Of a stretch of 64,000 bases of DNA, positions 2,757 to 18,009 are shown piece by piece. Both the position numbers and the translations under genes were made by a program. Below the pieces are notes generated by a model that had not been told where the DNA came from, searched no databases, and worked only from the letters and a program-made list of their open reading frames with translations. Each line of letters opens with the position of its first letter. The stretch's first letter is position 1. The stretch is from IMG/VR virus record IMGVR_UViG_3300030673_000004, positions 1-64,000 of that record; one strand, written 5' to 3'.

Positions 2757-3773
2757 TTAGACCTCATGAGTAAAACAGGAACGGTAGTTTCTCAATTCAT
2801 CAGCAGCATGCTGGATATAAAGATCATCCAGCCAATCGGACCAAAACGTATAATCAGGCGCAGGCAGATTGTTTGGAATCTCACGAACTCGAAGAATCTC
2901 ATCAGCAATCCACGCCTCAATGAATGGCCGGGACCACTCATTAGCACGAACGCGAAGCAACTCAGCACGACGAGGAGATGGGAGAGTAATACGCCCCGTC
3001 GTCAGATACTCCTCAAGTTCCCACACAACACGAAGAGCATGGTAATAAGCTTTAAGATCCGTTCCATCAGCAGCGGCTGCAGCTTTTGCACGGTCCCCGA
3101 AAGCATTCAATTTATTCACAAGAATAGGATACACTTCAGCCAAACTACGTCCCAGGGGGAAGGCACAATCAGGACCATACAGGTACATCTCACCAGCCTG
3201 AGCACCACGACGAGGTTCTACCGAGAAATGAGTCAGCCCCTCAAAGACACCTGTGTCAACAAACGACTTGAGTTTAAGGTTCACGTGATCACCTTGCGTG
3301 AACGAACCTGTATAAGACAAACAAGCATCCTGCACATGAAGCAATTCGTTGTACTTTTCACCCTTAGCAGAATACTTAGCGGCCTGACCTCGACAGTAAC
3401 CAATGAAGGGCATTACGATATTCGTCTGCAGCTTTTCACGATGCTCTAAAATGTAGTCCCACACAAAAGACGTGAAGATCAGACACGACTTTGGAGCATG
3501 CAGCAACTCCAGAACATAAGTCTGGCCACCAAGAGCCTGTTTGATGAAATGCCGCAAATCATAACACTTATCGTCCACGTCTGACGCGGTATTCTTCGTC
3601 GCCTTATTCGTGCCGTCTTCACGAGCAGGTACATACAAGTGATTAATCAACCGGCGCGAGTCTGCCATGAAGATATTGACAAAATCCGTGTCACTCTCAG
3701 GTGTGTTAGTTCCAAACAAGCGGGATCCGAAGATTACCTTTGAGATAGTACGGCCAAGAGGTAAGTTTTCCAC
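2757..3773 (-). CDS. DNA polymerase beta-superfamily nucleotidyltransferase (T4 NrdC.11/RlaP-like)
   Basis: FGSRLFGTNTPESDTD (GS...DxD) and DLKAYYHALRV; GTG start after the cassette SD. Confidence 0.8.
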   Translation of the reverse strand: MENLPLGRTISKVIFGSRLFGTNTPESDTDFVNIFMADSRRLINHLYVPAREDGTNKATKNTASDVDDKCYDLRHFIKQALGGQTYVLELLHAPKSCLIFTSFVWDYILEHREKLQTNIVMPFIGYCRGQAAKYSAKGEKYNELLHVQDACLSYTGSFTQGDHVNLKLKSFVDTGVFEGLTHFSVEPRRGAQAGEMYLYGPDCAFPLGRSLAEVYPILVNKLNAFGDRAKAAAAADGTDLKAYYHALRVVWELEEYLTTGRITLPSPRRAELLRVRANEWSRPFIEAWIADEILRVREIPNNLPAPDYTFWSDWLDDLYIQHAADELRNYRSCFTHEV

Positions 3774-3780
3774 GAAGTGC

Positions 3781-3832
3781 TCCTTGTTGAGGTGACAAGG
3801 AACAATATACATTAATTATGCTTAGCTGTCAA
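3781..3832 (-). promoter_or_regulatory. repeated sigma70 promoter-leader cassette, diverged copy
   Basis: TTGACA(3832-3827)-17-TATATT(3809-3804) with the same CTTGTCACCTCAACAAGGAG leader. Confidence 0.8.
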
Positions 3833-4048
3833 GTCTTTGCGCTTACCATACAAAGAAATTATAGTATCAAACTGAGCAAGCATATCCTCGTCAGGAATGA
3901 ATCCCGAAGCATCACGATTATTTATCAGATAGTAATCAGGCATACGAAAAGTTAAACAGCGCTTCGTATGATATCTGACTAACAAATGCTGCTGATATTC
4001 ATAAATTGTCTGTGACTGATCAAGACTTCTGTGAGAATCTCGTGTTAC
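3812..4048 (-). pseudogene. coaE: detached 3' end of the dephospho-CoA kinase domain
   Basis: Start-less frame VTRDSHRSLDQSQTIYEYQ...PDYYLINN...*; joins RRVVT at 6219 in frame when the insertion is removed. Confidence 0.7.
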
Positions 4049-4241
4049 TTCAACAAGGCTTCGATTTCGGGTGGCACGTCTTTGTTTTCGGGATTATTTT
4101 CCGCCATCCACCCTGGCCTGTGCTCTGCCACCCACGCAGGATGTATGCAGCCAGCCACTCGGGCTTGAATTTTACCATCCACTCGGGATTGTTCTTGGCT
4201 AAGATCATGCACTGCTTCTCGGTCAAATCACTGATTTTCAT
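4045..4241 (-). pseudogene. cargo gene with 8-aa P-x-W repeats and a 1-nt frameshift near 4142
   Basis: NNPEWMVKFKPEWLAAY continues in another frame as HPAWVAEHRPGWMAENNP...EALLK*; AGGAG SD upstream. Confidence 0.55.
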
Positions 4242-4345
4242 GGTCTTATTCTCCTGTGTTACTTGTCTGTGTTCTCATGTACGTTGTGTAAACTCAGCAC
4301 ATTCTTAATATAATCAAACATTAACTTTTGTCACTACTTCTTTGC

Positions 4346-4915
4346 ATGAAGATTAAACTTAGTACTTACGCAAAGAATAACGGCATCCACTATCAGACAG
4401 CTTGGCGGTGGTTTCAGAAAGGTTTAATTCCGGGTGCTACTCAAGCACCAACAGGTACTGTCTTCATAGAAGAGCCAGCAACAGCAACAGCATTAAAGCC
4501 TGTAGTTGTTTGTTACTGTCGGGTATCTAATCAAAGTAGGCGTAAGGAGCTACAGTATCAAGTAGATAGGTGTCTCTCTTATTGCGCTGCTAAAGGCTAC
4601 GCTGTTGATAAAGTGTTCAAAGAAGTTGCTTCCGGCATGAATGACAACCGAAAAGAACTATGGGCAGCTATCAATGCAGAACCAACTATAATTGTGGTTG
4701 AGAATAAAGATCGACTTACTAGATTTGGTTTTAATTACATAGAAAAGTTACTTCTCCCTAAATGTACTATCGAAGTTATATCTCCAGCACAGACAGATGA
4801 ACAAGACCTAATCAAAGATATGATTTCTGTAGTCACATCCTTCTGTTGTCGATTATATGGCTTGCGTAGAGCAAAAAATAAAGTTAATGCTGTAAAAGAA
4901 GCTCTTGAGTTATGA
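4346..4915 (+). CDS. tnpA: IS607 serine-recombinase transposase
   Basis: N-terminal MerR-like HTH (GIHYQTAWRWF), YCRVS catalytic Ser, VVENKDRLTRFG, SFCCRLYGLR. Confidence 0.93.
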   Translation: MKIKLSTYAKNNGIHYQTAWRWFQKGLIPGATQAPTGTVFIEEPATATALKPVVVCYCRVSNQSRRKELQYQVDRCLSYCAAKGYAVDKVFKEVASGMNDNRKELWAAINAEPTIIVVENKDRLTRFGFNYIEKLLLPKCTIEVISPAQTDEQDLIKDMISVVTSFCCRLYGLRRAKNKVNAVKEALEL

Positions 4916-6189
4916 CTTCATTTATTCGCACAAGTCAGCATAGCTTAAAAGACCTTAATAAATGTAAAGCATATGAGCTAAACCTGTTTATCCGTGCTTA
5001 CAGAGAAGCTGTAAATGTTTATGTTGATTTTCTGTGGAATACTAGAATTGAATTTAATACTACTGTTCTTGATGTAAAAGAACATCAGTACAATGTACCA
5101 AAGTTTATACCTAAGCTACTAGAAAATTTTAATACGCTACTAACGTCTAGGGCGTTGAAGTGTGCCTCTACGCAGGCTTGTGGGGTAGTTGCCTCTGTTT
5201 TAGATAAAAGACAGAAAGATGAGAGTAAATTAGAGTGGTTTTATTCTCAAGGTAAAAAGCCATCAGCCGCACTAATTGAAAGATTATCGAAACCACCTGT
5301 ATGTCCTAACACACAAAATATAAACTGCGAACTGAATAGTATTATAGTCAGTGTTGGTGCAGAAATTAATAGTTTTGATTTATGGCTTAATTTTTCAGCG
5401 TTGTTCAAAAGTAAACGAGGTTTTAAGCTGGCTGTGCCCGCTAGGCATCATAGGCAATCTCGGAAATGGCAGGCAAGAGGAAAGTTACTTACATCTATTC
5501 TTTTGAATGAGCACCAATTTAATCTACGTTGGGACGTTGAAGAGCCTAAGAAGCGTACTTCTGGTACTATCGTAGGTGTAGATCAAGGGATTACGGATTT
5601 ATTAACAATATCAAATAATCAAGAGTTTCCAATAGACATTCATGGGTACACACTTACCTCTATTTTGCATAAGATAGCTAGAAAACGTAAAGGGTCTCTA
5701 GCCTTTGCTGCTGCCCAGCAGCACAGAAAGAATTATATTAATTGGTATGTCAAGAAACTTGATTTAGCTGATGTAAAAGAGGTAAAACTCGAAAAGATAA
5801 CAAATATAGGCTACAGAAGAACATCCAGTAGATTTCTTCGTGGCTTTACAAATACGTTGATTAGAGATTCACTAGAACGCCTATGTTTGGAAAGCGGTGT
5901 CCGTTTTTCGCTCATTGACAATGAATTCAATAGTCAACGTTGCAATAAATGCGGTTGGACACAGAAGAGTAATAGAAAAGGTAAGTTGTTTCTTTGTAAA
6001 AACTGTAAGCATGAAGCAGATGCTGATGTAAATGCTTCATGTAACATTTTAATCAGGGATAGCTTAATTCTACTACCTTTTGGGTTCCGTGCTAAAAAGT
6101 TAAACATTAACGGGTTCTTTTGGACTCAAGAACATGTTGCTTTGAAGTACGGGGAAGAGCTTACAGTCCTTCTTAACCGAGAAACTTAA
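4912..6189 (+). CDS. tnpB: TnpB RNA-guided RuvC nuclease
   Basis: RuvC-I VGVDQG, RuvC-II KLEK, Zn ribbon CNKCG..CKNC, RuvC-III DADVNASCNI; ATGA overlap with tnpA. Confidence 0.9.
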   Translation: MTSFIRTSQHSLKDLNKCKAYELNLFIRAYREAVNVYVDFLWNTRIEFNTTVLDVKEHQYNVPKFIPKLLENFNTLLTSRALKCASTQACGVVASVLDKRQKDESKLEWFYSQGKKPSAALIERLSKPPVCPNTQNINCELNSIIVSVGAEINSFDLWLNFSALFKSKRGFKLAVPARHHRQSRKWQARGKLLTSILLNEHQFNLRWDVEEPKKRTSGTIVGVDQGITDLLTISNNQEFPIDIHGYTLTSILHKIARKRKGSLAFAAAQQHRKNYINWYVKKLDLADVKEVKLEKITNIGYRRTSSRFLRGFTNTLIRDSLERLCLESGVRFSLIDNEFNSQRCNKCGWTQKSNRKGKLFLCKNCKHEADADVNASCNILIRDSLILLPFGFRAKKLNINGFFWTQEHVALKYGEELTVLLNRET

Positions 6190-6240
6190 AGTTTATAAAT
6201 ACTTATACTTTAAGTAACTGTTACAACACGTCGCATACAA
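6100..6240 (+). ncRNA. putative TnpB omega RNA (boundaries approximate)
   Basis: Inferred from position at the tnpB 3' end and element right end; hairpin TTAAAGT...ACTTTAA at 6186-6213. Confidence 0.4.
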
Positions 6241-7337
6241 GAGTTCATACTTTCACCGGACTCAACACAAAACCGAAGAGAACAACGATTCCACACAGAG
6301 GGCACGGAAACCATTGGTACCATCTCAAGAATCGTCGGTACATCCGAAACAACACGATCTAAAGCAGATAGCAGAAAAGGTAAGTTCATCGTATTAAACT
6401 TATTCAGCACTTTCCATGGATTGTACCAAGCACCACGAGTAAACAACAAGGAGGTCATTGCTTCAGAATTGTACGAGCCATTAGGAGCAAGAACAGAAAT
6501 ACCATACGGCTCAAAAAAGGCGCAAAGAGCGTCTTTATATGAATCCAACGGACGAACGTACTCTTTGAATACATAATCCGCGCTCACGTATACATAGCCA
6601 CAAGTACTAGCAACTAATCTGGCAAAGTAACTCTTACCGCTGCCAATAGTACCAAAAACTCCAAGGAGATTACGGCAAGTAGCGAGTGACATACCAAATA
6701 AACGAAGTTGCCTAATAGCAGAGCTTGAAATATACGAAAGTTCGGGTGAGCTCACAAAAAAAGTATAAGGCAAAGTCTTTTCTGCTAAGTCAAAAACAAA
6801 CTGCCGCTGCACAAGTTCAGACTTTAGATCCCCTACATCGCGCAAGCCGCGTATAATACTGACTTGATACGAAGGTATAGAGGAGTAATGCTGAAAAACA
6901 TCTGCAAGAGTACCTCTGAACTTAACAGTTTCATAAGACGAGGGAACACCAGGAATAGAAAAAGGGAAAACAGAGAATCCCGATGAAAAAACAGACGAAG
7001 CATTAAGTTTATCTGGATTCTGTCCAATAGCAACAATCACCTTATCAAAAGCATGAGTTGCTTGCTTCACGATATCCAAATGACCTTTATGAAAAGGATT
7101 AAATGAACCAGCGTAGATACCGACACGAAGTGTTTTCTTCTTTAAGCATGCCTCATACGCATCAATTCGTTTGCTATGCTGTCCTTGAAGCAGAGCACGA
7201 ACCAACGAAATATGTCCAGAAACAAACTCAGCATAAGGAAGAAAAGAATACTCAGCATAAATTTTATCGCTATACGATAGTAGGTCCGGAAGATCAGACT
7301 GCAAGACAGAACGATCATACTTATTAAACTTATGCAC
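6210..7337 (-). pseudogene. coaD: HD C-terminal half + phosphopantetheine adenylyltransferase + dephospho-CoA kinase N-terminal part, truncated by IS607
   Basis: YAGSFNPFHKGHLDI, IIRGLR, YISSSAIR (CoaD); GVFGTIGSGKS..SAD (CoaE P-loop). Confidence 0.8.
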
Positions 7338-7362
7338 ATAGGAAGGTGTATCCGGTGTTGCA

Positions 7363-7749
7363 TTAACAAGCTTCGAGCTCGGTCACAAGATCTTGCAAAT
7401 AAGCAGGGACATAGGCATCATTTTCCTTTGACATCTGCTGCATCAGAGCAACAGACGCCTCCTCGTTGTCATTCCGACGAGGATCATAAACTACATCATG
7501 AAACAGGGCTGCCCAGTACATGGCAGTACGAACACACTCAGTAAACATCTGAGTATCCGGTGAGTTTATCTGATCCGCAATGGAATACACGTGTTCCATT
7601 GTATGAAAATGACGATGAGGCTGCGCGTAAGCCTCCTTAAAAAAGGAGCGCCATGCTGGCAGCGCATTCACATAATCAAAAACAAAGTGCTCAGAAGCCA
7701 GGACAAACCTTTCAGCTAGACACACTAAATATACATTAATTTTGTACAC
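7363..7749 (-). pseudogene. HD phosphohydrolase N-terminal half, out of frame with 6210..7337 (start uncertain)
   Basis: YAQPHRHFHTMEH, AALFHDVVYDP, NEEAS motifs. Confidence 0.7.
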
Positions 7750-7756
7750 GTGTCAG
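7728..7756 (-). promoter_or_regulatory. sigma70-type promoter
   Basis: CTGACA-17-TATATT with the AAAATTAATG spacer shared with the cassette. Confidence 0.6.
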
Positions 7757-8047
7757 CTAAGCAGGGAAATTAGCAAAAATAATCTGATCAAATTCTGGTG
7801 TCATTCGCTTAATCTTACCAAGGGATACTGCTCTCCAAGCGTCTCTTAGAGCATACGCATAAGGACTTTGATCGTTGTCCATAAAAGCTTTTTCACAAAG
7901 AATCCGATACAACGGATGGATCCCGATGTCAGACTTAAGCATATCCTCAAACCCAAAGTGCTTAATGAGTATTAGCTCTGCAGCGCTAATTTGCGTACCG
8001 TACCGCATAGTATCACATCCCCAAGTAATCATAAGCAAGCGTGTCAT
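7757..8047 (-). CDS. hypothetical protein
   Basis: ORF packed in a minus-strand gene run. Confidence 0.5.
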   Translation of the reverse strand: MTRLLMITWGCDTMRYGTQISAAELILIKHFGFEDMLKSDIGIHPLYRILCEKAFMDNDQSPYAYALRDAWRAVSLGKIKRMTPEFDQIIFANFPA

Positions 8048-8264: not shown

Positions 8265-8690
8265 TTAGAAAATGGTTTCAATACCCAAAGACTCTTTGGT
8301 TTGCCAATCAGGTTCTGTGATTCCTGAAAGCAAAACAAGCTTTTGACGAATATTGTTATTCCGGGAGAACGAACTCGATACAGGGATAAGATAAGTAGGA
8401 CGGCGATCTTCACTGAGATCAGCCAAATAGTCCAACACAGAATCAAATCCGCCGTCAAGATACACAAGGTCATACTTCTGCATCCCCAAAGCCTTCTGAG
8501 CTGCAAAAATGTCACAAGCGATATCTACAGTGTATGAACCATGCTTCTGTAGAAGCAACGATTCAAGCTTAGCATACTCGCCCTCGAACGAGTAACTCCC
8601 TTTAATTCGGAGATAATGAATACCACCAAAAGAACCCTCATCCTGACACATATTAGCATCGTCATCAATGATCAAAATCTTAAAAGGCAT
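8265..8690 (-). CDS. stand-alone receiver (REC-like) domain protein
   Basis: KILIIDDD ... KYDLVYLD; start moved to ATG at 8690. Confidence 0.6.
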   Translation of the reverse strand: MPFKILIIDDDANMCQDEGSFGGIHYLRIKGSYSFEGEYAKLESLLLQKHGSYTVDIACDIFAAQKALGMQKYDLVYLDGGFDSVLDYLADLSEDRRPTYLIPVSSSFSRNNNIRQKLVLLSGITEPDWQTKESLGIETIF

Positions 8691-8693
8691 TGG

Positions 8694-8748
8694 AACTCCT
8701 TGTTGAGGTGACAAGAACAAATATACATTAATTTTGTATGTTTGTCAA
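8694..8748 (-). promoter_or_regulatory. repeated sigma70 promoter-leader-SD cassette, copy 2
   Basis: Identical to 298-352. Confidence 0.85.
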
Positions 8749-8749
8749 G

Positions 8750-9907
8750 TTATCTTAATGTAGCCACAAAAGAAATTAAAGATGCCTTATCTGACAACAG
8801 AGAACGAGCATAGATTGCATCTAGCAGCTTACGCTGAACAACACCACAAGAAGCACCGGAGAATCCCAGGGAAACAAGATCACCACCAGTAAGAGCCAAT
8901 TCCTTAGGGAACAACGGAATATCTTGAGTTGATTTATTCAAGCAACGTGCCTCAAAATAGGATGGCGGACAACAAAAACAGCGCAAAGTTAGAGACACAT
9001 AATTGTATAACTCCCGAGAGCGCACAAGAGAATGCACAGCCTTGGTACTAACACCTGCAGTATAAGAGCGAAAAGCCTGCAGTGCAGATAACTGAATAGA
9101 TGTAGGTGAAACATACGATAAATCTGGCTTACCTGACGCAAATAAGGAGACAAATCCAACAGCATCACGATCAGACAAGGATAGACCTTGAAGATCAACT
9201 GGTTTTGGATCAAAATCTACACCAAACAGAGAAGTACCGATAGTTGTTCGGAGCAACCCACAAAGAACTTCAGTATTGAATGACTTAATAAACGCCTTAT
9301 GCAACTCTGCTTGAATACGCTCAGGTGAGCAACTAAGCAGCGTAGAACTCATCTCAAGTGCCGCCACAAACGTAGTGTCATCAATACTAAACCCGAGACG
9401 ACTCGCAAACTGAACTGCACGAAGAATCCGAAGAGGATCTTCAGTGAACCGATCCCGAGCATCACCCACAGCACGAATCACACCAGATTGCAAGTCAGCG
9501 GCACCGCCAAAGGGATCAATTGTTACACCGCACTCGACATCATAAGCGATAGCATTAATTGTAAAGTCCCGCCGAGCTAAATCATCAACAACAGACAAGT
9601 TACTATCCAGTAGAACTTCAAAGTCACGATGACCGGCACCTGTAGACTGCTCTGTCCGAGGAAGAGCAAAATCATAAGAGTCACCGTCAATGAGAGCAGT
9701 CACAATGCCAAAACTACGTCCTACCTCAGATGCGTGCCCGAGAGAAGATACTGCTTGCTGAACCTGTTCTAGAGATAAGCCAGTAACAAGATAATCAATA
9801 TCCTTTGGAACAAGGCCAAGCACAGCATCTCGCACACAACCACCAACGCGGTACAGGCGACCACCTTGTTGCTCAATGCTAGCTAGAATCTTATGTTCAG
9901 TCTTCAT
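8750..9907 (-). CDS. cca: class II CCA-adding tRNA nucleotidyltransferase
   Basis: VGGCVRDAVLG..KDIDY, DLARRDFTINA, FTEDPLRILRAVQF, SPERI. Confidence 0.88.
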   Translation of the reverse strand: MKTEHKILASIEQQGGRLYRVGGCVRDAVLGLVPKDIDYLVTGLSLEQVQQAVSSLGHASEVGRSFGIVTALIDGDSYDFALPRTEQSTGAGHRDFEVLLDSNLSVVDDLARRDFTINAIAYDVECGVTIDPFGGAADLQSGVIRAVGDARDRFTEDPLRILRAVQFASRLGFSIDDTTFVAALEMSSTLLSCSPERIQAELHKAFIKSFNTEVLCGLLRTTIGTSLFGVDFDPKPVDLQGLSLSDRDAVGFVSLFASGKPDLSYVSPTSIQLSALQAFRSYTAGVSTKAVHSLVRSRELYNYVSLTLRCFCCPPSYFEARCLNKSTQDIPLFPKELALTGGDLVSLGFSGASCGVVQRKLLDAIYARSLLSDKASLISFVATLR

Positions 9908-12446: not shown

Positions 12447-13214
12447 TTACAGCAAAGAACCTTGAAAAACACACTGACGAGTAGGTTTACTACCACGCAA
12501 GAAGGACAAGGCATAGGAGTCACTAAAGGCATAAGCAAACCTATGCTTAAACATACGGCCAAAGTTCGACAGATCAATCGGGCCGCGAAGAGCTTCATAA
12601 GCACCATGAACATCACGCATAGTAAAGGTATTGTCCTTAGGGCTCACAGCCAGCCCACGCAGGATGTCTTCATCCCACGCATGCTTTTGCAGATGAGCGA
12701 GCATCTCAGACAAAATAGTATGGTGATCAAAAGCCAGTGTACCAGCAAGAGCAGTAGAGACAGTCACCCACTGAGCAGTAGCTGCGTCATCATTTGCTTT
12801 AATTGGTAATGAATCTGCCTGATCGTGGTGCAGCAAACAGAAATAGGATACATCTGCGGTGTACCACCGAGGATCCCGATCATAGGAAGCATATGTCTTA
12901 AACTGATGAAGAGGCACAGTACCCATAGGAATACTGGTTTCTTCTTCCAACTCACGCAATGCTGCGTGGTCTACACTCTCCTTGTCCTGAATGTTAACAA
13001 AACCACCAGGAAAGGCAAAGCAACCAGCGTAGGGAGCAAACTTCCGTTCAATCAACAGCACCTGCAGCCGATCCAGGTTCCGAGTGCTCGGATCCAATCG
13101 GAAAATCACAATATCAGCGGTAAGCGTAGGACGTTCAAACACGGTTGGGTCGTAACCAGAATCCGGGTAAAGGTCCAAATACGATCCGTGCTTTCCAGAA
13201 ATACGTTCAGTCAT
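12447..13214 (-). CDS. nrtR: NrtR-type Nudix (ADP-ribose) + winged-HTH regulator
   Basis: PGGFV..ESVDHAALRELEEET, RDPR, LAFDH; C-terminal FTMRDVHGAYEAL...SNFGRMF...RGSKP. Confidence 0.8.
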   Translation of the reverse strand: MTERISGKHGSYLDLYPDSGYDPTVFERPTLTADIVIFRLDPSTRNLDRLQVLLIERKFAPYAGCFAFPGGFVNIQDKESVDHAALRELEEETSIPMGTVPLHQFKTYASYDRDPRWYTADVSYFCLLHHDQADSLPIKANDDAATAQWVTVSTALAGTLAFDHHTILSEMLAHLQKHAWDEDILRGLAVSPKDNTFTMRDVHGAYEALRGPIDLSNFGRMFKHRFAYAFSDSYALSFLRGSKPTRQCVFQGSLL

Positions 13215-13809
13215 TGTAAAGCCCCAATTTGTAACAAAGTTTAACCGTTTCCGGTGCCATTAATTTAAGTAACTCACTATCTGGTGCCTTAGCAGCAAAA
13301 GATTTACGAGCTTGTGTTGAAGATATACTCTGAAAATCAGCAGGAAGAGCAGGTAACAGCGTGTGGAAACTGGATTTAAGCCATGGCAAGGATACACTGG
13401 AACCCATGCCACGAGGGAGCACAATAATAGAGAACTCCCGAATGAGAGATTTTCCATTAATCCAATGATCCTCAATCTGTTCAGCTTGGTCTTGACCAAC
13501 AATCAAAGAAACAGCATCCACACCAGGAGACATCTTAGCATAGTTAAGGAGTTCATAGGTACTCCCAGTGCTACTACTAAGCTCAGACTCAAGCAGACTT
13601 ACATGAGTGCAAGGAATACGCTGAAAAAGACTCTCACACAAATGCATACGAATGCTGTAGTCAACCAGATCTTTGCCATAAGCATGTTTAAGAACGGGAA
13701 TGATCCAAACCCTATCCACATTTGGACAAGTGGCAAGGGTTTGACACACTACGGCGCGATGCGCTAGTGTTGGAGGATTAAACGACCCACCGTAGAGTGC
13801 CACACGCAT
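13207..13809 (-). CDS. nadD: nicotinate-nucleotide adenylyltransferase
   Basis: ALYGGSFNPPTLAH, LIVGQD..W, ISSTQAR. Confidence 0.88.
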   Translation of the reverse strand: MRVALYGGSFNPPTLAHRAVVCQTLATCPNVDRVWIIPVLKHAYGKDLVDYSIRMHLCESLFQRIPCTHVSLLESELSSSTGSTYELLNYAKMSPGVDAVSLIVGQDQAEQIEDHWINGKSLIREFSIIVLPRGMGSSVSLPWLKSSFHTLLPALPADFQSISSTQARKSFAAKAPDSELLKLMAPETVKLCYKLGLYND

Positions 13810-14627
13810 TAGCCAAACACCTTACCCTGCAGAACACTCTCTACGGTAGCAACAGTGCAGCCTTGCTTAGCCATGTTCTCAAGAAAACGAATCCCTTGCT
13901 CTTCATAGCCGGTGACATCCGACATACAATCTTCCAAGAGCACGATCTTCTTCAGATCAAAACCCAAGTTGTAGTCTTGAATGCGCTGAACCATCTGCTC
14001 AACCGAGCACCGAACACAATGCGAACGAGCCTCACCACCAACGACGATGGGCAGATTACCGAAAAGGAGATTTCCAAGCAGATTGTCATTGAAATCTGCC
14101 AAGATATTCCCATGCCCTTTATACTCCGGCTCAAAAATGCCAAAGCTCTCCAAGTCCTGATGGTATCCCTTCTTGGCCATAGTGGCAATACGGCCCGGAC
14201 CACTGTTCTCCCACGAATGCACAGCAGCAACAAGGTTGTTACTCAGTTCATAGCTCTGTGTGCCAGGAACACAATGAACAGGCCAAATCATGCTACCACG
14301 AATCGGATCAATGTAACGCTTTGCGTATTCCTGCTTTTTCGGATCGGCAGCTTGAATAGCACCACTCTCAAGAGCAAGAAGGTTAACTAGGGTAAAGGGC
14401 TCTGGAGAAACCCCTTCCGAAGTCAGCCACCAACCAGGATGACCAATGTGAGCAATAGGGTGCTGATCTACAGTAAGAAAAATATCAACAATATCCTCCT
14501 CTGCCTCCGTAATGAAATTCGAGAATCGAACGACATCCTCAAAAGCACCAGCAGGGCACAGCGGCTCGCCAGGGCAAACAAATGCCTTCTGAAAATCAAT
14601 TCCAAAAACCTTAAACGGTGTACCCAT
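13809..14627 (-). CDS. pncA: nicotinamidase (isochorismatase family)
   Basis: IDFQKAF, DQH, WPVHCV, KG, GEARSHCV; start at 14627 after AAGGAG. Confidence 0.85.
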   Translation of the reverse strand: MGTPFKVFGIDFQKAFVCPGEPLCPAGAFEDVVRFSNFITEAEEDIVDIFLTVDQHPIAHIGHPGWWLTSEGVSPEPFTLVNLLALESGAIQAADPKKQEYAKRYIDPIRGSMIWPVHCVPGTQSYELSNNLVAAVHSWENSGPGRIATMAKKGYHQDLESFGIFEPEYKGHGNILADFNDNLLGNLLFGNLPIVVGGEARSHCVRCSVEQMVQRIQDYNLGFDLKKIVLLEDCMSDVTGYEEQGIRFLENMAKQGCTVATVESVLQGKVFG

Positions 14628-14654
14628 CAGAAATCTCCTTCTCAGTGAATGCAC

Positions 14655-16715
14655 TTAACCAACAGTCAATAACTTAGCCTTGAGCTCCTTGTATGCCTTA
14701 GTGTAGTAAACACCACCAATAGCTTCTCGAAAATCGAACCCATAAGCTCTACGGCTCACGACAAGTACAGGCGGAGCCTGAACACGCTTCACAATGCCCA
14801 TGCCCTTAAACAAGCCCCACCAACGTTCAAGATCTGCAACGAAATCTTCCGCTGTTGGGAAAAGATACTTAAACTCTGTATATTTGTCAACATCAATCTC
14901 AAGATGTTCCAAAAGATCACCCATAATATAATGATTAAGGGTATCCTCAACATTATCGCGATTCCATGGCTCAACCCACGAAGCAAATAGCTTGTCGTGG
15001 TACCAGTAGGTGATAGGATCACCCTTACCTGCATCAACATTCTGATCAGCACTCAACTCCGCCGAGGGCTTAAGTGTGTACAAGGAGTCAGGAATGATCT
15101 TATGATCAAAAGTGTTCTCCACAGCACGAAGAGTTTCATAAACTTCATGCTTCCAGAGATCCGCTAGAGGAGCAAAATACCCCATGTGATCACCGCCCAT
15201 AGTGCAGTAACCAACAGTAAGCTCAGCTTTGTTTCCATTGTTGGGAAACACCGCATGAAACCCAGCAGCCAACATAGCCTGAACACCAGCACCACGCATA
15301 CGAGCCTGGATATTCTCCGTATCATCCCAGAACTCCGTGGCCTTAACGTCCGACTCCCACAGCCCAACATGAACACTGGTCATGAAGTCCGTAACAGACT
15401 TCCCAATAGGAATCTCCAAGTAGCGAATACCCAAATTATCTGCAATTGTTTTTGCAATACCCTTGGTTGTTTCGCTATTAAATTCAGTAGGCATATTAAC
15501 AGCGATCACGTTTTCAGCACCAAGAGCCTTTACATGAAGCAACGTGGACAGTGCCGAGTCCACACCACCACTCAACCCAATCACAGCACGCTTGATGCCA
15601 CCCTGCTCACAAAACTTCTGGATGCCGTAAGCCAAAACGTCATGAAGTTCTGGGTCTTGCTGCTCAGTCTGCCAAGGCGACTCAGCAGCCACTTGGACAC
15701 TCGTAGGAGTAACAGTAACCAAACCCATGCATTCCCTGAGAGGGGGTAGCGCACAGATAACAGCACCGTCCATATAAACAGTAGAGCTCCCGTCAAAAAC
15801 AAAAACATCCTTACCGTTGTTCTGAATACCAACACTGTTGACATAGATCAGAGCATTAAACTCTTGCGAATGCTGAGCAAAACGACGATTGCGAGCACCA
15901 TTCTTGCCTTGAGTAAATGGTGAGCAACTCAAGTTTACATGCACATGCATCTTCCCTGGAGCCGACACGCTGCGACCCCGGCAGTTATGAATAGGCTTAG
16001 TAGCATAATCATCATCCCAACCATCTTCACAGATCGACGGTGTGATATACAAATTGTCTTCACTGTAGATAGACATTATGGGTGTATGAGCAGTGCCGCT
16101 ACGAAAATAACGCTTATCTTCAAACTCACGATAGTTTGGCAGATTCGTTTTATGGTACTCCATAGCGTACCTGCCTAGGATTACAGCGCTATTAAAACGC
16201 TCCCTGCGACCATCTTCGTAATTCGTATCACCCAAGGTCACAGAACCTAAAATAGCAGTAATACCAAGTTCCAGAGCAACAAAGGAAATATCCTGTTTTA
16301 GGTACCCCAGACAATCCTTAAGGAAAGCTGCATCCTCCCAGTCATCACCTACCATGTAGCCAGGAAGAGCCATTTCAGGAAAAACAGCAACCTGAGCACC
16401 AGCATCCTTGGCAAGGTGCAGGTACTTAATGATCTTAGCGGCATTCAAATCAGGGCGCTTTGCAACAACCTCAATCTGACAGATAGCGATAGTCTTTGCA
16501 GTAGTAAGCATTTCGTCGTCCTCTAATTCGTCGTTAATTCCACAAAGCTTAACCTGGTCCCATAGCAGATAATCTTCCTCAGCATCATCTGCCACATGGA
16601 GAAACCCACAGGTACCATTTGCGTGCTTTGGCTTTTGTGCATCTAATCCCCAGTAAGGACATTTGCCTCTGCCATCATAGCAATAGATACCTGTAGGAAT
16701 TTCCAGATGGCACAT
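14655..16715 (-). CDS. nadE: glutamine-dependent NAD+ synthetase with a 68-aa Cys-rich N-terminal extension (alternative start 16511)
   Basis: Nitrilase domain FPEM, KTNLPNYREFEDKRYF, ICED; synthetase GLSGGVDS, ENIQARMR, NKAELTVGYCT, PSAEL. Confidence 0.92.
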   Translation of the reverse strand: MCHLEIPTGIYCYDGRGKCPYWGLDAQKPKHANGTCGFLHVADDAEEDYLLWDQVKLCGINDELEDDEMLTTAKTIAICQIEVVAKRPDLNAAKIIKYLHLAKDAGAQVAVFPEMALPGYMVGDDWEDAAFLKDCLGYLKQDISFVALELGITAILGSVTLGDTNYEDGRRERFNSAVILGRYAMEYHKTNLPNYREFEDKRYFRSGTAHTPIMSIYSEDNLYITPSICEDGWDDDYATKPIHNCRGRSVSAPGKMHVHVNLSCSPFTQGKNGARNRRFAQHSQEFNALIYVNSVGIQNNGKDVFVFDGSSTVYMDGAVICALPPLRECMGLVTVTPTSVQVAAESPWQTEQQDPELHDVLAYGIQKFCEQGGIKRAVIGLSGGVDSALSTLLHVKALGAENVIAVNMPTEFNSETTKGIAKTIADNLGIRYLEIPIGKSVTDFMTSVHVGLWESDVKATEFWDDTENIQARMRGAGVQAMLAAGFHAVFPNNGNKAELTVGYCTMGGDHMGYFAPLADLWKHEVYETLRAVENTFDHKIIPDSLYTLKPSAELSADQNVDAGKGDPITYWYHDKLFASWVEPWNRDNVEDTLNHYIMGDLLEHLEIDVDKYTEFKYLFPTAEDFVADLERWWGLFKGMGIVKRVQAPPVLVVSRRAYGFDFREAIGGVYYTKAYKELKAKLLTVG

Positions 16716-16716
16716 A

Positions 16717-18009
16717 TCAGGCAGCCAACCCGTAAGTGCGCTGCAGGATGTCTTCGTGACGGCTCTCGTTGAAGTAGTCACCTACCATGTAGGTACGCTT
16801 CAGAGCATCTTCATGCACAGCGTCCTCACACATAGCCTTACCAGCAGTGTCGCTAACCTTTGCCACTGGACGATCATTGACTTCAACAGCCTTCATCACG
16901 AGTTGAAGTGCCTTTACACCCAAGTCATTAGTGAAGTCCGTACCAATGCCAAACGATACCTTAGCACGACCAGCAAACACCTTGAGCAGATTCTCACAAG
17001 TATCTGGATTAAGGCCATCCGAGAACATCAGCACCTTCGTCTTAGGATCAATGTGGAGTTTCTCGTAGTGCCGAATAATCTTCTCACCCCAAATGAACGG
17101 ATCGCCCGAGTCATGACGAGCACCAATGTAACTCTGTGCCAAGAGCATGTCAAAGTCACGAAGGAAAGCATCAACACCAACGATATCCGAAAGAGCAATG
17201 CCCGTCTTGGCACGGTAAAAATGCTGCCACAGATCAAGCATATACTTATTCGAGCTGCCAAGCGTCACATTATCCAGAGCCTGACCGACCTCCAAGAACT
17301 CGTGGGCCATTGTGCCACTGAACGGCGTCTTAAACTCGACAGCCATCTGAACATTCGACGTGCCCAAAAAGACACCAGGAATATCAGCAAACTCCTTGAC
17401 AAGATTTTCAACCACGTAGTGCTGCCAAGCAAACGATGCACGACGACGAGTACCAAACTCGCTGAACGTAAATGCATACTGCTTAGCCAGATCCTTATAA
17501 CGCTTGATCTTGTCCTCAAGTCGCTGCATGCCCTCGTACAGATCCAAATCCTTGTACACATCCCGGAAATATGCTTCCTGCGTCATGGTCATGGCATGGA
17601 TCTCAAAATTGGTATTGTACCGAGCTGGACCATGCGTCCGGATGTCCAAAAGATCACCATTGGGCTCAATCGTGATGAAGTCACGGTTGAGCTGAGCCAA
17701 GCGCAGAAATTCAAGGTAAGGACGAGTCATATAAGGAACAGCGTGCAAACGAGCAAGTGTCCCTGGACTCATGCGACGAGTACAAGCCAAGTCCATCTGG
17801 TTGCTCACCTCAGCAGCGTACTTTGCCAGGTTGACACCAGTAGTACGATTGTGAAACTTCTTCGACATCGTAACATGAGGAAGAAGCGCATCATAAACCT
17901 GACCCATAGTCAGGAAGTAGAAGTCGATGTCATCGAAGGCATGGTTCCGCCCCGCAAGCTTCGACTGATGCTTCTGTGCGAATTCTTCCAAAGTAATATG
18001 TTCTGCCAT
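16717..18009 (-). CDS. pncB: nicotinate phosphoribosyltransferase
   Basis: DFYFLTM, EFGTRRR, GTSNV, GTMAHE, RHDSGDP, FSDGL, FGIGT, KVSD. Confidence 0.9.
   Translation of the reverse strand: MAEHITLEEFAQKHQSKLAGRNHAFDDIDFYFLTMGQVYDALLPHVTMSKKFHNRTTGVNLAKYAAEVSNQMDLACTRRMSPGTLARLHAVPYMTRPYLEFLRLAQLNRDFITIEPNGDLLDIRTHGPARYNTNFEIHAMTMTQEAYFRDVYKDLDLYEGMQRLEDKIKRYKDLAKQYAFTFSEFGTRRRASFAWQHYVVENLVKEFADIPGVFLGTSNVQMAVEFKTPFSGTMAHEFLEVGQALDNVTLGSSNKYMLDLWQHFYRAKTGIALSDIVGVDAFLRDFDMLLAQSYIGARHDSGDPFIWGEKIIRHYEKLHIDPKTKVLMFSDGLNPDTCENLLKVFAGRAKVSFGIGTDFTNDLGVKALQLVMKAVEVNDRPVAKVSDTAGKAMCEDAVHEDALKRTYMVGDYFNESRHEDILQRTYGLAA

What the first reader, a model, noticed from the sequence alone, without database searches (positions are those of the whole stretch)
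3812..7749. Reconstructed HD-CoaD-CoaE triple fusion for the last two steps of CoA synthesis
Seen: three fragments (7363-7749, 6219-7382, 3812-4048) join into one protein with HD hydrolase, phosphopantetheine adenylyltransferase and dephospho-CoA kinase domains. The HD break is an imperfect tandem CGAGCT/CGAAGCT; deleting 7 nt gives VTELVNAT in frame. Known: bifunctional CoaD-CoaE is the layout of eukaryotic CoA synthase, while bacteria usually keep the enzymes separate. Inference: a second cofactor-rebuilding module beside the NAD operon, possibly countering CoA depletion. It is disrupted in this genome.
Basis: partly seen in the sequence, partly recalled or inferred. Interest (0 to 1): 0.6.

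Follow-up and report, generated by a model that had tools for sequence, protein, structure and literature searches.

The report
Broken phage CoA-synthesis gene pair
A giant phage from peat carries the last two enzymes of coenzyme A synthesis (one fused to an uncharacterised HD hydrolase), but as two overlapping genes now wrecked by three separate mutations, so the "triple fusion" is a by-product of decay, not a designed enzyme.

Summary
The three fragments and their domains are real. On the minus strand they are an HD hydrolase, a phosphopantetheine adenylyltransferase (PPAT/CoaD-like, clearly not NMNAT-like) and a dephospho-CoA kinase (DPCK/CoaE-like).

The 2.17-kb gap is an insertion carrying an IS607-family element (TnpA + TnpB), flanked by a 6-bp repeat.

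The single reading frame running from CoaD into CoaE is itself a lesion. Two relatives and a variant contig from another peat sample carry 4 more bases just before the CoaE ATG. With them, HD-CoaD ends in the family's normal tail (..GKDVTRYLP*), and CoaE starts inside that tail in another frame.

The ancestral layout is therefore two overlapping genes, HD-PPAT and DPCK, as in two other phage contigs, one of them from a 345-kb phage. The window copy has three lesions: a +1 frame break in HD, the 4-nt deletion, and the IS insertion. The two closest relatives have each deleted HD-PPAT independently.

HD-PPAT is a widespread, uncharacterised phage fusion that usually lacks a phage DPCK. The same HD family is fused as CoaD-CoaE-HD in Gracilibacteria and Absconditabacteria.

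I found no evidence for a role against CoA depletion. Interest is moderate to low.

The parts
7363..7749 (-). N-terminal fragment of the HD domain (128 codons, ends TAA 7365-7363). Carries the family motifs PHRHFHTMEH and FHDVVYDP..NDNEE.
7366..7382 (-). Zone of the net +1 frame break inside the HD domain. Contains CGAGCT/CGAAGCT at 7381-7369. The size of the lesion (1, 7 or 10 nt) is not resolvable.
7128..7382 (-). C-terminal part of the HD domain in the second frame (LVNAT.., KYDRSVL, YAEYS motifs of the family).
6693..7127 (-). PPAT (CoaD-like) domain, with GSFNPFHKGH, NPDK, IRGLRD..D..SE and ISSSAIR. It lacks its native last 8 codons and stop.
6692..6693 (-). Site of the 4-nt deletion (AAAG/AAGA present in L023, L030 and the X7 contig). 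The deletion puts CoaD in frame with the CoaE ATG at 6692-6690.
6219..6692 (-). CoaE (DPCK-like) N-terminal 158 codons, with P-loop GTIGSGKS and SAD. 78% identical to residues 1-157 of intact relative P0002.
6219..6224 (-). Copy 1 of the 6-bp direct repeat GTAACA at the insertion border.
4049..6218 (+). Inserted block of 2170 bp, absent from relative L023.
4049..4282 (+). Left 234 bp of the insertion. It holds short direct repeats and a 63-codon ORF with no family hit. It is not part of the identical IS pieces seen in run X5. No Rfam hit and no unusual RNA structure. Whether it belongs to the IS is unresolved.
4328..4915 (+). IS607-family serine-recombinase transposase TnpA.
4912..6189 (+). 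TnpB (RNA-guided nuclease family, Cas12f1-like TNB domain).
6060..6218 (+). Right end of the IS with terminal hairpin 6184-6195/6204-6215. Folds better than shuffles (z -2.2). Probably the omega-RNA scaffold (inference).
4043..4048 (-). Copy 2 of the 6-bp direct repeat GTAACA.
3812..4048 (-). CoaE C-terminal piece (VTRDSH...KHN, stop 3814-3812). 73% identical to residues 157-233 of P0002.
8694..8752 (-). Conserved promoter-like cassette (TTGACA-17-TATATT plus AAGGAG leader) upstream of the 151aa-79aa-96aa-HD-CoaD-CoaE gene string. A second copy at 3838-3780 overlaps the CoaE stop and serves the next gene (RlaP).

Best explanation
The locus is a decaying two-gene module of a 375-kb peat phage.

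**Ancestral state**
- Gene 1 encoded an HD-family metal-dependent phosphohydrolase fused to a phosphopantetheine adenylyltransferase (4'-phosphopantetheine + ATP -> dephospho-CoA).
- Gene 2 overlapped the end of gene 1 in another frame and encoded a dephospho-CoA kinase (dephospho-CoA -> CoA).

**Three independent lesions in the window genome**
- A net +1 frame break in the HD domain.
- A 4-nt deletion that removes the last 8 codons and the stop of gene 1 and welds it in frame to gene 2.
- A 2.17-kb insertion in gene 2 carrying an IS607-type TnpA/TnpB element.

The apparent triple fusion is a by-product of the second lesion.

**What is shown and what is inferred**
- Shown: the lesions, the ancestral layout and the domain families.
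- Inferred: when intact, the module raises CoA from the host's 4'-phosphopantetheine pool as an auxiliary metabolic function. The HD domain acts on a phosphoester linked to this pathway; its substrate is unknown.
For: **Domains**
- PPAT.
- DPCK: intact relative P0002 passes the Pfam CoaE cut-off (30.8 against 27). All significant PDB sequence hits are DPCK. The 15 best fold matches of its model (pLDDT 83) are DPCKs at E 1e-9 to 5e-7.
- HD: invariant H, HD and D in 48 homologues. The model has pLDDT 87 and an HD/PDE fold.

**The 4-nt deletion**
- An X7 contig is identical over 6656-6880 except for 'TCTT put in behind 6691'.
- L023 reads GGTAAAGATG..CCGTAA, and L030 reads ..SSSAIRQLTELGKDVIQYLP* overlapping MSFSTC.
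- The simulated variant gives ..LRLFGKDVTRYLP*, matching the family tails ..GADTTRYL* and ..DQFLP*.

**Separate adjacent genes elsewhere**
- L026: 8001-9029 and 9029-9658.
- L007: 5608-6645 and 6614-7273.

**Insertion**
-.

**Decay in the clade**
- L023 and L030 deleted most of HD-PPAT with different end points but keep CoaE.
- The phage has no second PPAT-like gene or CoaE.

**The lesions are real**
- 100% identity in independent assemblies at about 100x depth.
Against: - The variant carrying the extra 4 nt in this same phage rests on one 229-nt contig at depth 3.5. The support from L023 and L030 comes from relatives at 76-88% DNA identity.
- No enzyme activity was measured.
- PPAT and DPCK both score below NCBIfam's equivalog cut-offs (77 against 103.3; 24 against 65.55).
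- The in-frame PPAT-DPCK product could have been functional for a time.
- The 375-codon ORF might still yield an active PPAT if translation starts at GTG 7337.
- The order of the three lesions is unknown.
Confidence: 0.85

Rival explanations
1. One reading: a native single HD-CoaD-CoaE protein, a second cofactor-rebuilding module beside the NAD operon that counters CoA depletion by host defence, recently broken by two lesions.
For: - One open frame runs from CoaD into CoaE in the window.
- All three domains are linked elsewhere, as CoaD-CoaE-HD in CPR bacteria and as adjacent genes in L007 and L026.
- An NAD salvage island lies 5 kb away.
Against: - The continuity depends on a 4-nt deletion that three comparators lack. 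It also removes the conserved CoaD tail.
- The word search over lengths 206-656 aa found no same-order triple fusion.
- No literature on a CoA-depleting defence was found.
- 19 of 21 HD-PPAT phage records have no CoaE at all.
- Relatives have deleted HD-PPAT.
Confidence: 0.07
2. The 4-nt deletion created a working bifunctional PPAT-DPCK (with the HD domain at its front). This was selected for a while, like the PPAT-DPCK order of eukaryotic CoA synthase and the bacterial CoaD-CoaE fusions. Only later was it hit by the frameshift and the IS.
For: - Natural CoaD-CoaE fusions of about 375 aa exist (P0054, P0056, P0059).
- The fusion point falls in a linker-like tail.
- No further stops have accumulated. 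The HD-PPAT part read through the break still scores about 290 bits against the family HMM.
Against: - The order of events cannot be told.
- The conserved tail ..YLP, nearly invariant in the family, is lost.
- Only this genotype shows the fusion.
Confidence: 0.1
3. The adenylyltransferase is not a PPAT but acts on another substrate (NMN/NaMN, FMN or a sugar phosphate). The HD and kinase domains would then serve a different nucleotide pathway.
For: - The score is below the coaD equivalog cut-off (77 against 103.3).
- The Tyr of the D..YE motif is Ser in this subclade.
- The neighbours are nucleotidyltransferases of RNA repair and NAD salvage.
Against: - Full-length profile matches go only to PPATs (E 2e-29). 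NMNAT, CCT and GCT hits are limited to the HxGH motif at E 6e-4 or worse.
- The RGLR and ISSS motifs are conserved.
- The phage has a distinct NadD-like gene (TIGR00482 71 bits against coaD 19.7 bits).
- The partner kinase is DPCK-like by sequence and fold.
Confidence: 0.06
4. The gene is still expressed whole, by programmed frameshifting at the HD break and by removal of the insertion at the RNA level (an IStron-like self-splicing element).
For: IS605/607-type elements joined to group I introns (IStrons) are known (own knowledge).
Against: - There is no slippery site at 7382-7366.
- TnpA and TnpB lie antisense to CoaE.
- No intron or other Rfam family was found on either strand at E <= 1.
- The extra 234 nt shows no unusual structure (z +0.8).
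Confidence: 0.02

Closest known systems
Bacterial phosphopantetheine adenylyltransferase (CoaD/PPAT, TIGR01510; e.g. E. coli 1b6t, T. thermophilus 1od6)
   Same: - Full-length profile match (E 2e-29).
- Shares the HxGH, NPxK, RGLR, D..E and ISSS motifs.
- About 150-residue Rossmann-type domain.
   Different: - Fused behind an about 190-residue HD domain.
- Scores below the equivalog cut-off.
- Tyr of D..YE is replaced by Ser in this subclade.
- In the window the native tail is lost.
Dephospho-CoA kinase (CoaE, PF01121/TIGR00152)
   Same: - P-loop GxIGSGKS and the following acidic motif.
- Best sequence and fold matches are DPCKs.
- Lies directly after PPAT.
   Different: - Divergent: 30.8 bits for the intact relative.
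- About 30 extra C-terminal residues.
- In the window it is split by the insertion.
Phage-annotated coaD/coaE auxiliary metabolic genes (Brevundimonas/Caulobacter jumbo phages, Microcystis phage MaAM05; snow viromes, PMC11097641)
   Same: Phage-borne PPAT, mostly in large genomes. coaD and coaE are reported among abundant viral auxiliary metabolic genes.
   Different: Most cultured-phage hits in the list match only the PPAT part. The HD-PPAT fusion is known only from database entries; none of my searches of the held library found a paper on it.
CoaD-CoaE-HD proteins of Candidatus Gracilibacteria / Absconditabacterales (P0055, L034-L036)
   Same: - Same three domain families in one protein.
- The C-terminal domain matches the phage HD profile at 89.6 bits.
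- Intact 593-codon ORF under table 25.
   Different: - Domain order is CoaD-CoaE-HD.
- Cellular, probably housekeeping salvage enzymes.
- 25% identity to the window ORF.
Eukaryotic CoA synthase (COASY) and bacterial CoaD-CoaE fusions (P0054/56/59)
   Same: PPAT followed by DPCK on one chain.
   Different: In the window this order on one chain is produced by a 4-nt deletion. It is not an inherited architecture.
Class I cyclic-nucleotide phosphodiesterase catalytic domain, and YedJ/YpgQ-type HD hydrolases
   Same: - Best structural matches of the HD model: PDEs at Z 13-14.6 over about 200 residues; 2pq7, YhaM, YedJ and YpgQ at Z 8.6-11.
- Shares the HxxxH..HD..D metal motif.
   Different: - 11-18% identity.
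- The Z range is one that helical folds can reach by chance.
- Substrate unknown.
IS607-family insertion sequences (TnpA serine recombinase + TnpB)
   Same: TnpA passes the IS607 equivalog model (163 bits). tnpA and tnpB overlap. There is a structured right end.
   Different: - A 6-bp repeat flanks the insertion; IS607 elements are not expected to make target duplications (own knowledge).
- 234 extra bp sit at the left end.

Membership tests
PPAT / CoaD | HxGH nucleotidyltransferase motif near the N-terminus of the domain | tested here: met
   GSFNPFHKGH in the window. Nearly invariant in 47 aligned sequences.
PPAT / CoaD | Full-length similarity to solved PPATs rather than to other HxGH transferases | tested here: met
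   Profile E 2e-29 to 5e-21 for 34 distinct PPAT sequences covering residues 5-146 of 159. NMNAT, CCT and GCT reach only E 6e-4 or worse, on the motif region alone. The single sequence gives E 1.4e-11.
PPAT / CoaD | Score over the curated equivalog cut-off (TIGR01510, 103.3 bits) | tested here: not met
   77.1 bits for the window and 74.2 for P0004. It is the best-scoring family but below the cut-off.
PPAT / CoaD | Catalyses 4'-phosphopantetheine + ATP -> dephospho-CoA | not testable with these tools
   Needs an enzyme assay.
DPCK / CoaE | P-loop GxxGxGKS/T at the N-terminus, followed by an acidic substrate-binding motif | tested here: met
   GTIGSGKS and VSAD in the window. G/I/GSGKS is nearly invariant in A3.
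DPCK / CoaE | Pfam PF01121 gathering score (27 bits) | tested here: inconclusive
   Window fragment: 25.6 bits, or 27.4 in the six-frame search. Intact relative P0002: 30.8. L007 CoaE: 82.6. TIGR00152: 24.4 against 65.55.
DPCK / CoaE | Fold closest to solved DPCKs among P-loop kinases | tested here: met
   The model is of relative P0002, not of the window protein. Ranks 1-15 are all DPCK (E 1.4e-9 to 5e-7, TM 0.5-0.62). Cytidylate and adenylate kinases rank below.
HD superfamily | H...HD...D metal-binding residues on an all-helical fold | tested here: met
   Invariant H56, H85, D86 and D147 (P0005 numbering). Helical model with pLDDT 87. HD/PDE folds are the top matches. Pfam HD score is 18, below the cut-off of 22.
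AcpH (ACP phosphodiesterase, PF04336) | Sequence or profile similarity to AcpH | tested here: not met
   hhalign probability 0.1% against E. coli AcpH. PF04336 finds nothing in the phage genome at E <= 10.
Native HD-CoaD-CoaE single-chain enzyme | Intact homologues with the same order on one ORF | tested here: not met
   None among 60 hits of length 206-656 aa. Relatives have a stop and a frame change between CoaD and CoaE. The exhaustive representative search was not run.
IS607 family | Serine-recombinase TnpA passing the IS607 model, with an adjacent TnpB | tested here: met
   NF033518 at 163.2 bits against 110. TnpB hits PF07282 at 51 bits against 26.3.
IStron (group I intron + IS) | Group I ribozyme in the sense of the interrupted gene | tested here: not met
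   No Rfam match at E <= 1 on either strand. z +0.8 for the spare 234 nt.

The most novel reading that the evidence does not exclude
The HD family fused to PPAT in over a hundred phage proteins, and to CoaD-CoaE in Gracilibacteria and Absconditabacteria, is an undescribed enzyme of CoA salvage. For example, it could be a phosphodiesterase or pyrophosphohydrolase that frees 4'-phosphopantetheine from holo-carrier proteins or CoA-derived molecules (an AcpH-like job done by an unrelated HD family). Large phages would then strip a host pool and channel it into dephospho-CoA/CoA.
Probability: 0.2. Interest if true: 0.7.

Novelty: new variant of a known kind. Interest (0 to 1): 0.35.

Why it matters
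- **For this genome:** the locus should be annotated as two pseudogenes plus an IS607 element, not as a new trifunctional enzyme.
- **More broadly:** the HD domain is repeatedly linked to PPAT in many large phages, usually without a phage kinase. The same HD family is joined to CoaD-CoaE in bacteria with reduced genomes. Together these point to an unassigned reaction next to the last steps of CoA synthesis. That reaction can be tested directly with intact homologues.
- **Method:** an open frame across two domains can be created by decay, so fusion calls need comparison with relatives.

Tried and rejected
- **Cultured-phage DNA searches** found nothing for the region or the IS, in near or distant mode.
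- **Sizing the HD lesion with a family HMM** failed. Removing 1, 7 or 10 nt scores equally.
- **AcpH membership of the HD domain** was rejected.
- **Foldseek on the HD model** gave only weak PDE hits (E about 0.01). VIA-align gave Z 13-14.6 to PDEs, which for helical folds is only suggestive.
- **IStron, ribozyme or recoding rescue** was rejected.
- **Assembly artefact** was rejected.
- **A second intact CoaE or PPAT-like gene, or a phage ACP, elsewhere in the genome:** none.
- **CoaE next to HD-PPAT as a rule:** no. It is adjacent in 1 of 21 IMG/VR loci (L007) and present anywhere in only 2 of 21 records, and in 0 of the 3 records that are at least 90% complete.
- **Literature** on phage PPAT/DPCK function, HD-PPAT fusions or CoA-depleting defence: nothing specific beyond lists of auxiliary metabolic genes.
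- **The short 'joint' 4311/7490 in runs X6 and X7** is an 18+18-nt match inside an unrelated contig, not an empty site.
- **Not run:** the exhaustive representative protein search was skipped because of its cost and because the fusion question was settled by direct comparison.
- **Limit of the read data:** the runs were available only as contigs, so minor genotypes, RNA ends and expression could not be seen.

Full report
**Setting.** The window is the first 64 kb of a 375,537-bp virus record with direct terminal repeats. The same phage, carrying the same 375-codon ORF, occurs on five contigs of about 375.6 kb. One of them (L024) is 100% identical to the window over 9 kb. Four peat metagenome runs hold the stretch completely, and a Logan contig at about 100x depth shows no difference over 3600-7900. 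What follows is therefore real sequence of the dominant genotype.

**Anatomy (minus strand).**
- ORF 7749-7363 has 128 codons and carries the front half of an HD domain. It ends ..VTELEAC-TAA.
- A second frame opens at 7382 and runs to 6210. It holds the rest of the HD domain, a complete cytidylyltransferase-like domain and the P-loop half of a CoaE-like kinase.
- Then come 2170 bp carrying two plus-strand genes. One is an IS607-family serine-recombinase transposase (NF033518, 163 bits against a cut-off of 110). The other is a TnpB.
- The last 77 codons of the kinase follow at 4048-3812.
- The insertion is bordered by the 6-bp repeat GTAACA at 6224-6219 and 4048-4043.
- The two kinase pieces cover residues 1-157 (78% identity) and 157-233 (73%) of the intact 234-residue relative P0002, without gaps. 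The uninterrupted gene therefore had one copy of the repeat.
- Identical pieces of the IS (4283-5703) occur in a freshwater run without the phage flanks. The IS core thus starts near 4283. The left 234 bp (4049-4282) are extra inserted DNA with short direct repeats. They have no Rfam hit and no unusual fold.

**What the domains are.**
- *Adenylyltransferase.* It is PPAT-like. TIGR01510 scores 77 bits over 2-139 of 155, against at most 32 bits for NMNAT models on the motif only. The first 34 PDB sequence hits are all PPAT. A profile of 47 family members hits PPATs at E 2e-29 over full length, with NMNATs at 6e-4 or worse.
- The phage has a separate NadD/NMNAT-like gene at 13207-13809 (TIGR00482 71 bits, coaD 19.7 bits) inside an NAD salvage island of NAPRTase, NadE and Nudix.
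- *Kinase.* It is DPCK-like. P0002 passes the Pfam CoaE cut-off. Its significant PDB sequence hits are DPCKs. The 15 best fold matches of its model (pLDDT 83) are DPCKs.
- Both enzymes score below NCBIfam equivalog cut-offs, so activity is inferred, not shown.
- *HD domain.* It belongs to a family with invariant H, HD and D and only a weak Pfam HD score. A model (pLDDT 87) resembles class I cyclic-nucleotide phosphodiesterase catalytic domains best (Z 13-14.6). Next come HD hydrolases such as 2pq7, YhaM, YedJ and YpgQ (Z 8.6-11). This range is only suggestive for helical folds.
- The HD domain is not AcpH-like.

**The fusion is a lesion.**
- The closest relative contig (L023, 76-88% DNA identity) has a stand-alone CoaE that starts MSLATCRNLL. 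These are exactly the residues that follow CoaD in the window.
- Just before that ATG, L023 reads GGTAAAGATG...CCGTAA. A second relative (L030) reads ..SSSAIRQLTELGKDVIQYLP*, overlapping MSFSTC in another frame.
- A 229-nt contig of peat run X7 is identical to the window over 6656-6880 except for four extra bases at 6691/6692.
- Putting those four bases into the window gives ..SSSAIRQLRLFGKDVTRYLP*. This is the normal C-terminus of the family, as in ..LGADTTRYL* and ..DQFLP*.
- The ancestral state is therefore HD-PPAT with its own stop, and CoaE starting inside its last codons in another frame.
- The same two-gene layout is seen in L026 (8001-9029 and 9029-9658) and in L007, from a 345-kb phage contig (5608-6645 and 6614-7273).
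- The window genotype has lost 4 nt. This deletes the CoaD tail and welds the frames together.

**The HD break.** The frame must shift by +1 between 7382 and 7366. Removing 7 nt gives VTELVNAT, which lines up without gaps with homologues. However, removing 1 or 10 nt scores the same against the family HMM (289-291 bits). There is no slippery site.

**Decay in the clade.**
- L023 and L030 have each deleted most of HD-PPAT, with different end points. L023 keeps about 10 terminal codons and L030 about 27. Both keep CoaE intact.
- The window keeps all parts but has three lesions, and there is no second copy in the genome.
- Read through the break, the HD-PPAT part has no further stops and still scores about 290 bits. 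The inactivation is therefore recent.

**Wider family.**
- HD-PPAT fusions of 300-385 residues are common in large phage contigs. The word search gave 49 such proteins, IMG/VR gave 21 loci, and an ESM Atlas cluster has 105 members, 73% of them viral.
- Only 2 of 21 such records encode a CoaE anywhere, and none of the three records that are at least 90% complete does. HD-PPAT is the conserved unit and the kinase is optional.
- The same HD family (89.6 bits) forms the C-terminus of CoaD-CoaE-HD proteins of about 593 residues in Absconditabacterales and Gracilibacteria. These are open only under their table 25, with no ORF of 100 codons or more under table 11.
- An Atlas cluster of 63 such proteins, about 598 residues long, exists.
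- This is a Rosetta-stone link between the HD domain and the end of the CoA pathway.

**Mechanism.**
- *Shown:* the domain families, the layout and the lesions.
- *Inferred from established CoA biochemistry:* the intact module would turn 4'-phosphopantetheine into dephospho-CoA and, where the kinase is present, into CoA.
- The role of the HD domain is open. AcpH shows that an HD-family enzyme can release 4'-phosphopantetheine from holo-ACP (PMC8557913). The present family is unrelated to AcpH by sequence, so this is an analogy only.
- Phage coaD and coaE have been listed as abundant viral auxiliary genes without a known purpose (PMC11097641).
- No paper on HD-PPAT fusions or on a CoA-depleting defence was found.

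**Verdict.**
- The window copy is a pseudogenised pair.
- The uncharacterised HD-PPAT family is the part worth following up.

Noticed in passing
window 337-305, 3838-3780, 8752-8694, partial 9946-9911 (minus strand); several copies in L023: A conserved intergenic cassette of about 60 nt: a sigma-70-like promoter (TTGACA, 17 nt, TATATT) followed by a fixed leader ending in AAGGAG. It implies that the RlaP gene starts at GTG 3773, not ATG 3812. It also implies that the 151aa-79aa-96aa-HD-CoaD-CoaE string is one transcription unit.
   Followed up: partly
window 12447-18009 (minus strand): NAD salvage island: NAPRTase (16717-18009), glutamine-dependent NAD synthetase (14655-16781), an unknown 281-aa ORF, a NadD/NMNAT-like gene (13207-13809) and a Nudix/NtrR-like protein (12447-13214).
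   Followed up: partly
window 8750-9907 and 2757-3773 (minus strand): A CCA-adding/poly(A) polymerase-type nucleotidyltransferase and an RlaP-family (RNA repair pathway) nucleotidyltransferase flank the CoA module. The same neighbours appear in L023 and L030.
   Followed up: no
L034, L035, L036 (Absconditabacterales and Gracilibacteria MAGs): A conserved CoaD-CoaE-HD protein of about 593 aa, open only under table 25 (40 TGA codons in L035). It is probably the sole end-pathway CoA enzyme of these reduced genomes.
   Followed up: partly
window 4049-4282: 234 bp at the left of the insertion, with direct repeats (4054-4092, 4104-4191) and a 63-codon minus-strand ORF that has no family hit. It is present with 4 differences in run X7 but is not part of the IS copies in run X5. 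Its origin is unclear.
   Followed up: partly
window 8265-8720 and 7757-8047 (minus strand): Two small ORFs (151 and 96 codons) upstream of HD with no family hits. The first is absent from L023, and the second is truncated there by the same deletion that removed HD-PPAT.
   Followed up: no
window 6184-6215 and 6060-6235 (plus strand): A terminal hairpin and a moderately stable fold (z -2.2) at the IS right end, likely the TnpB omega-RNA scaffold. Its guide would read into the CoaE target.
   Followed up: no
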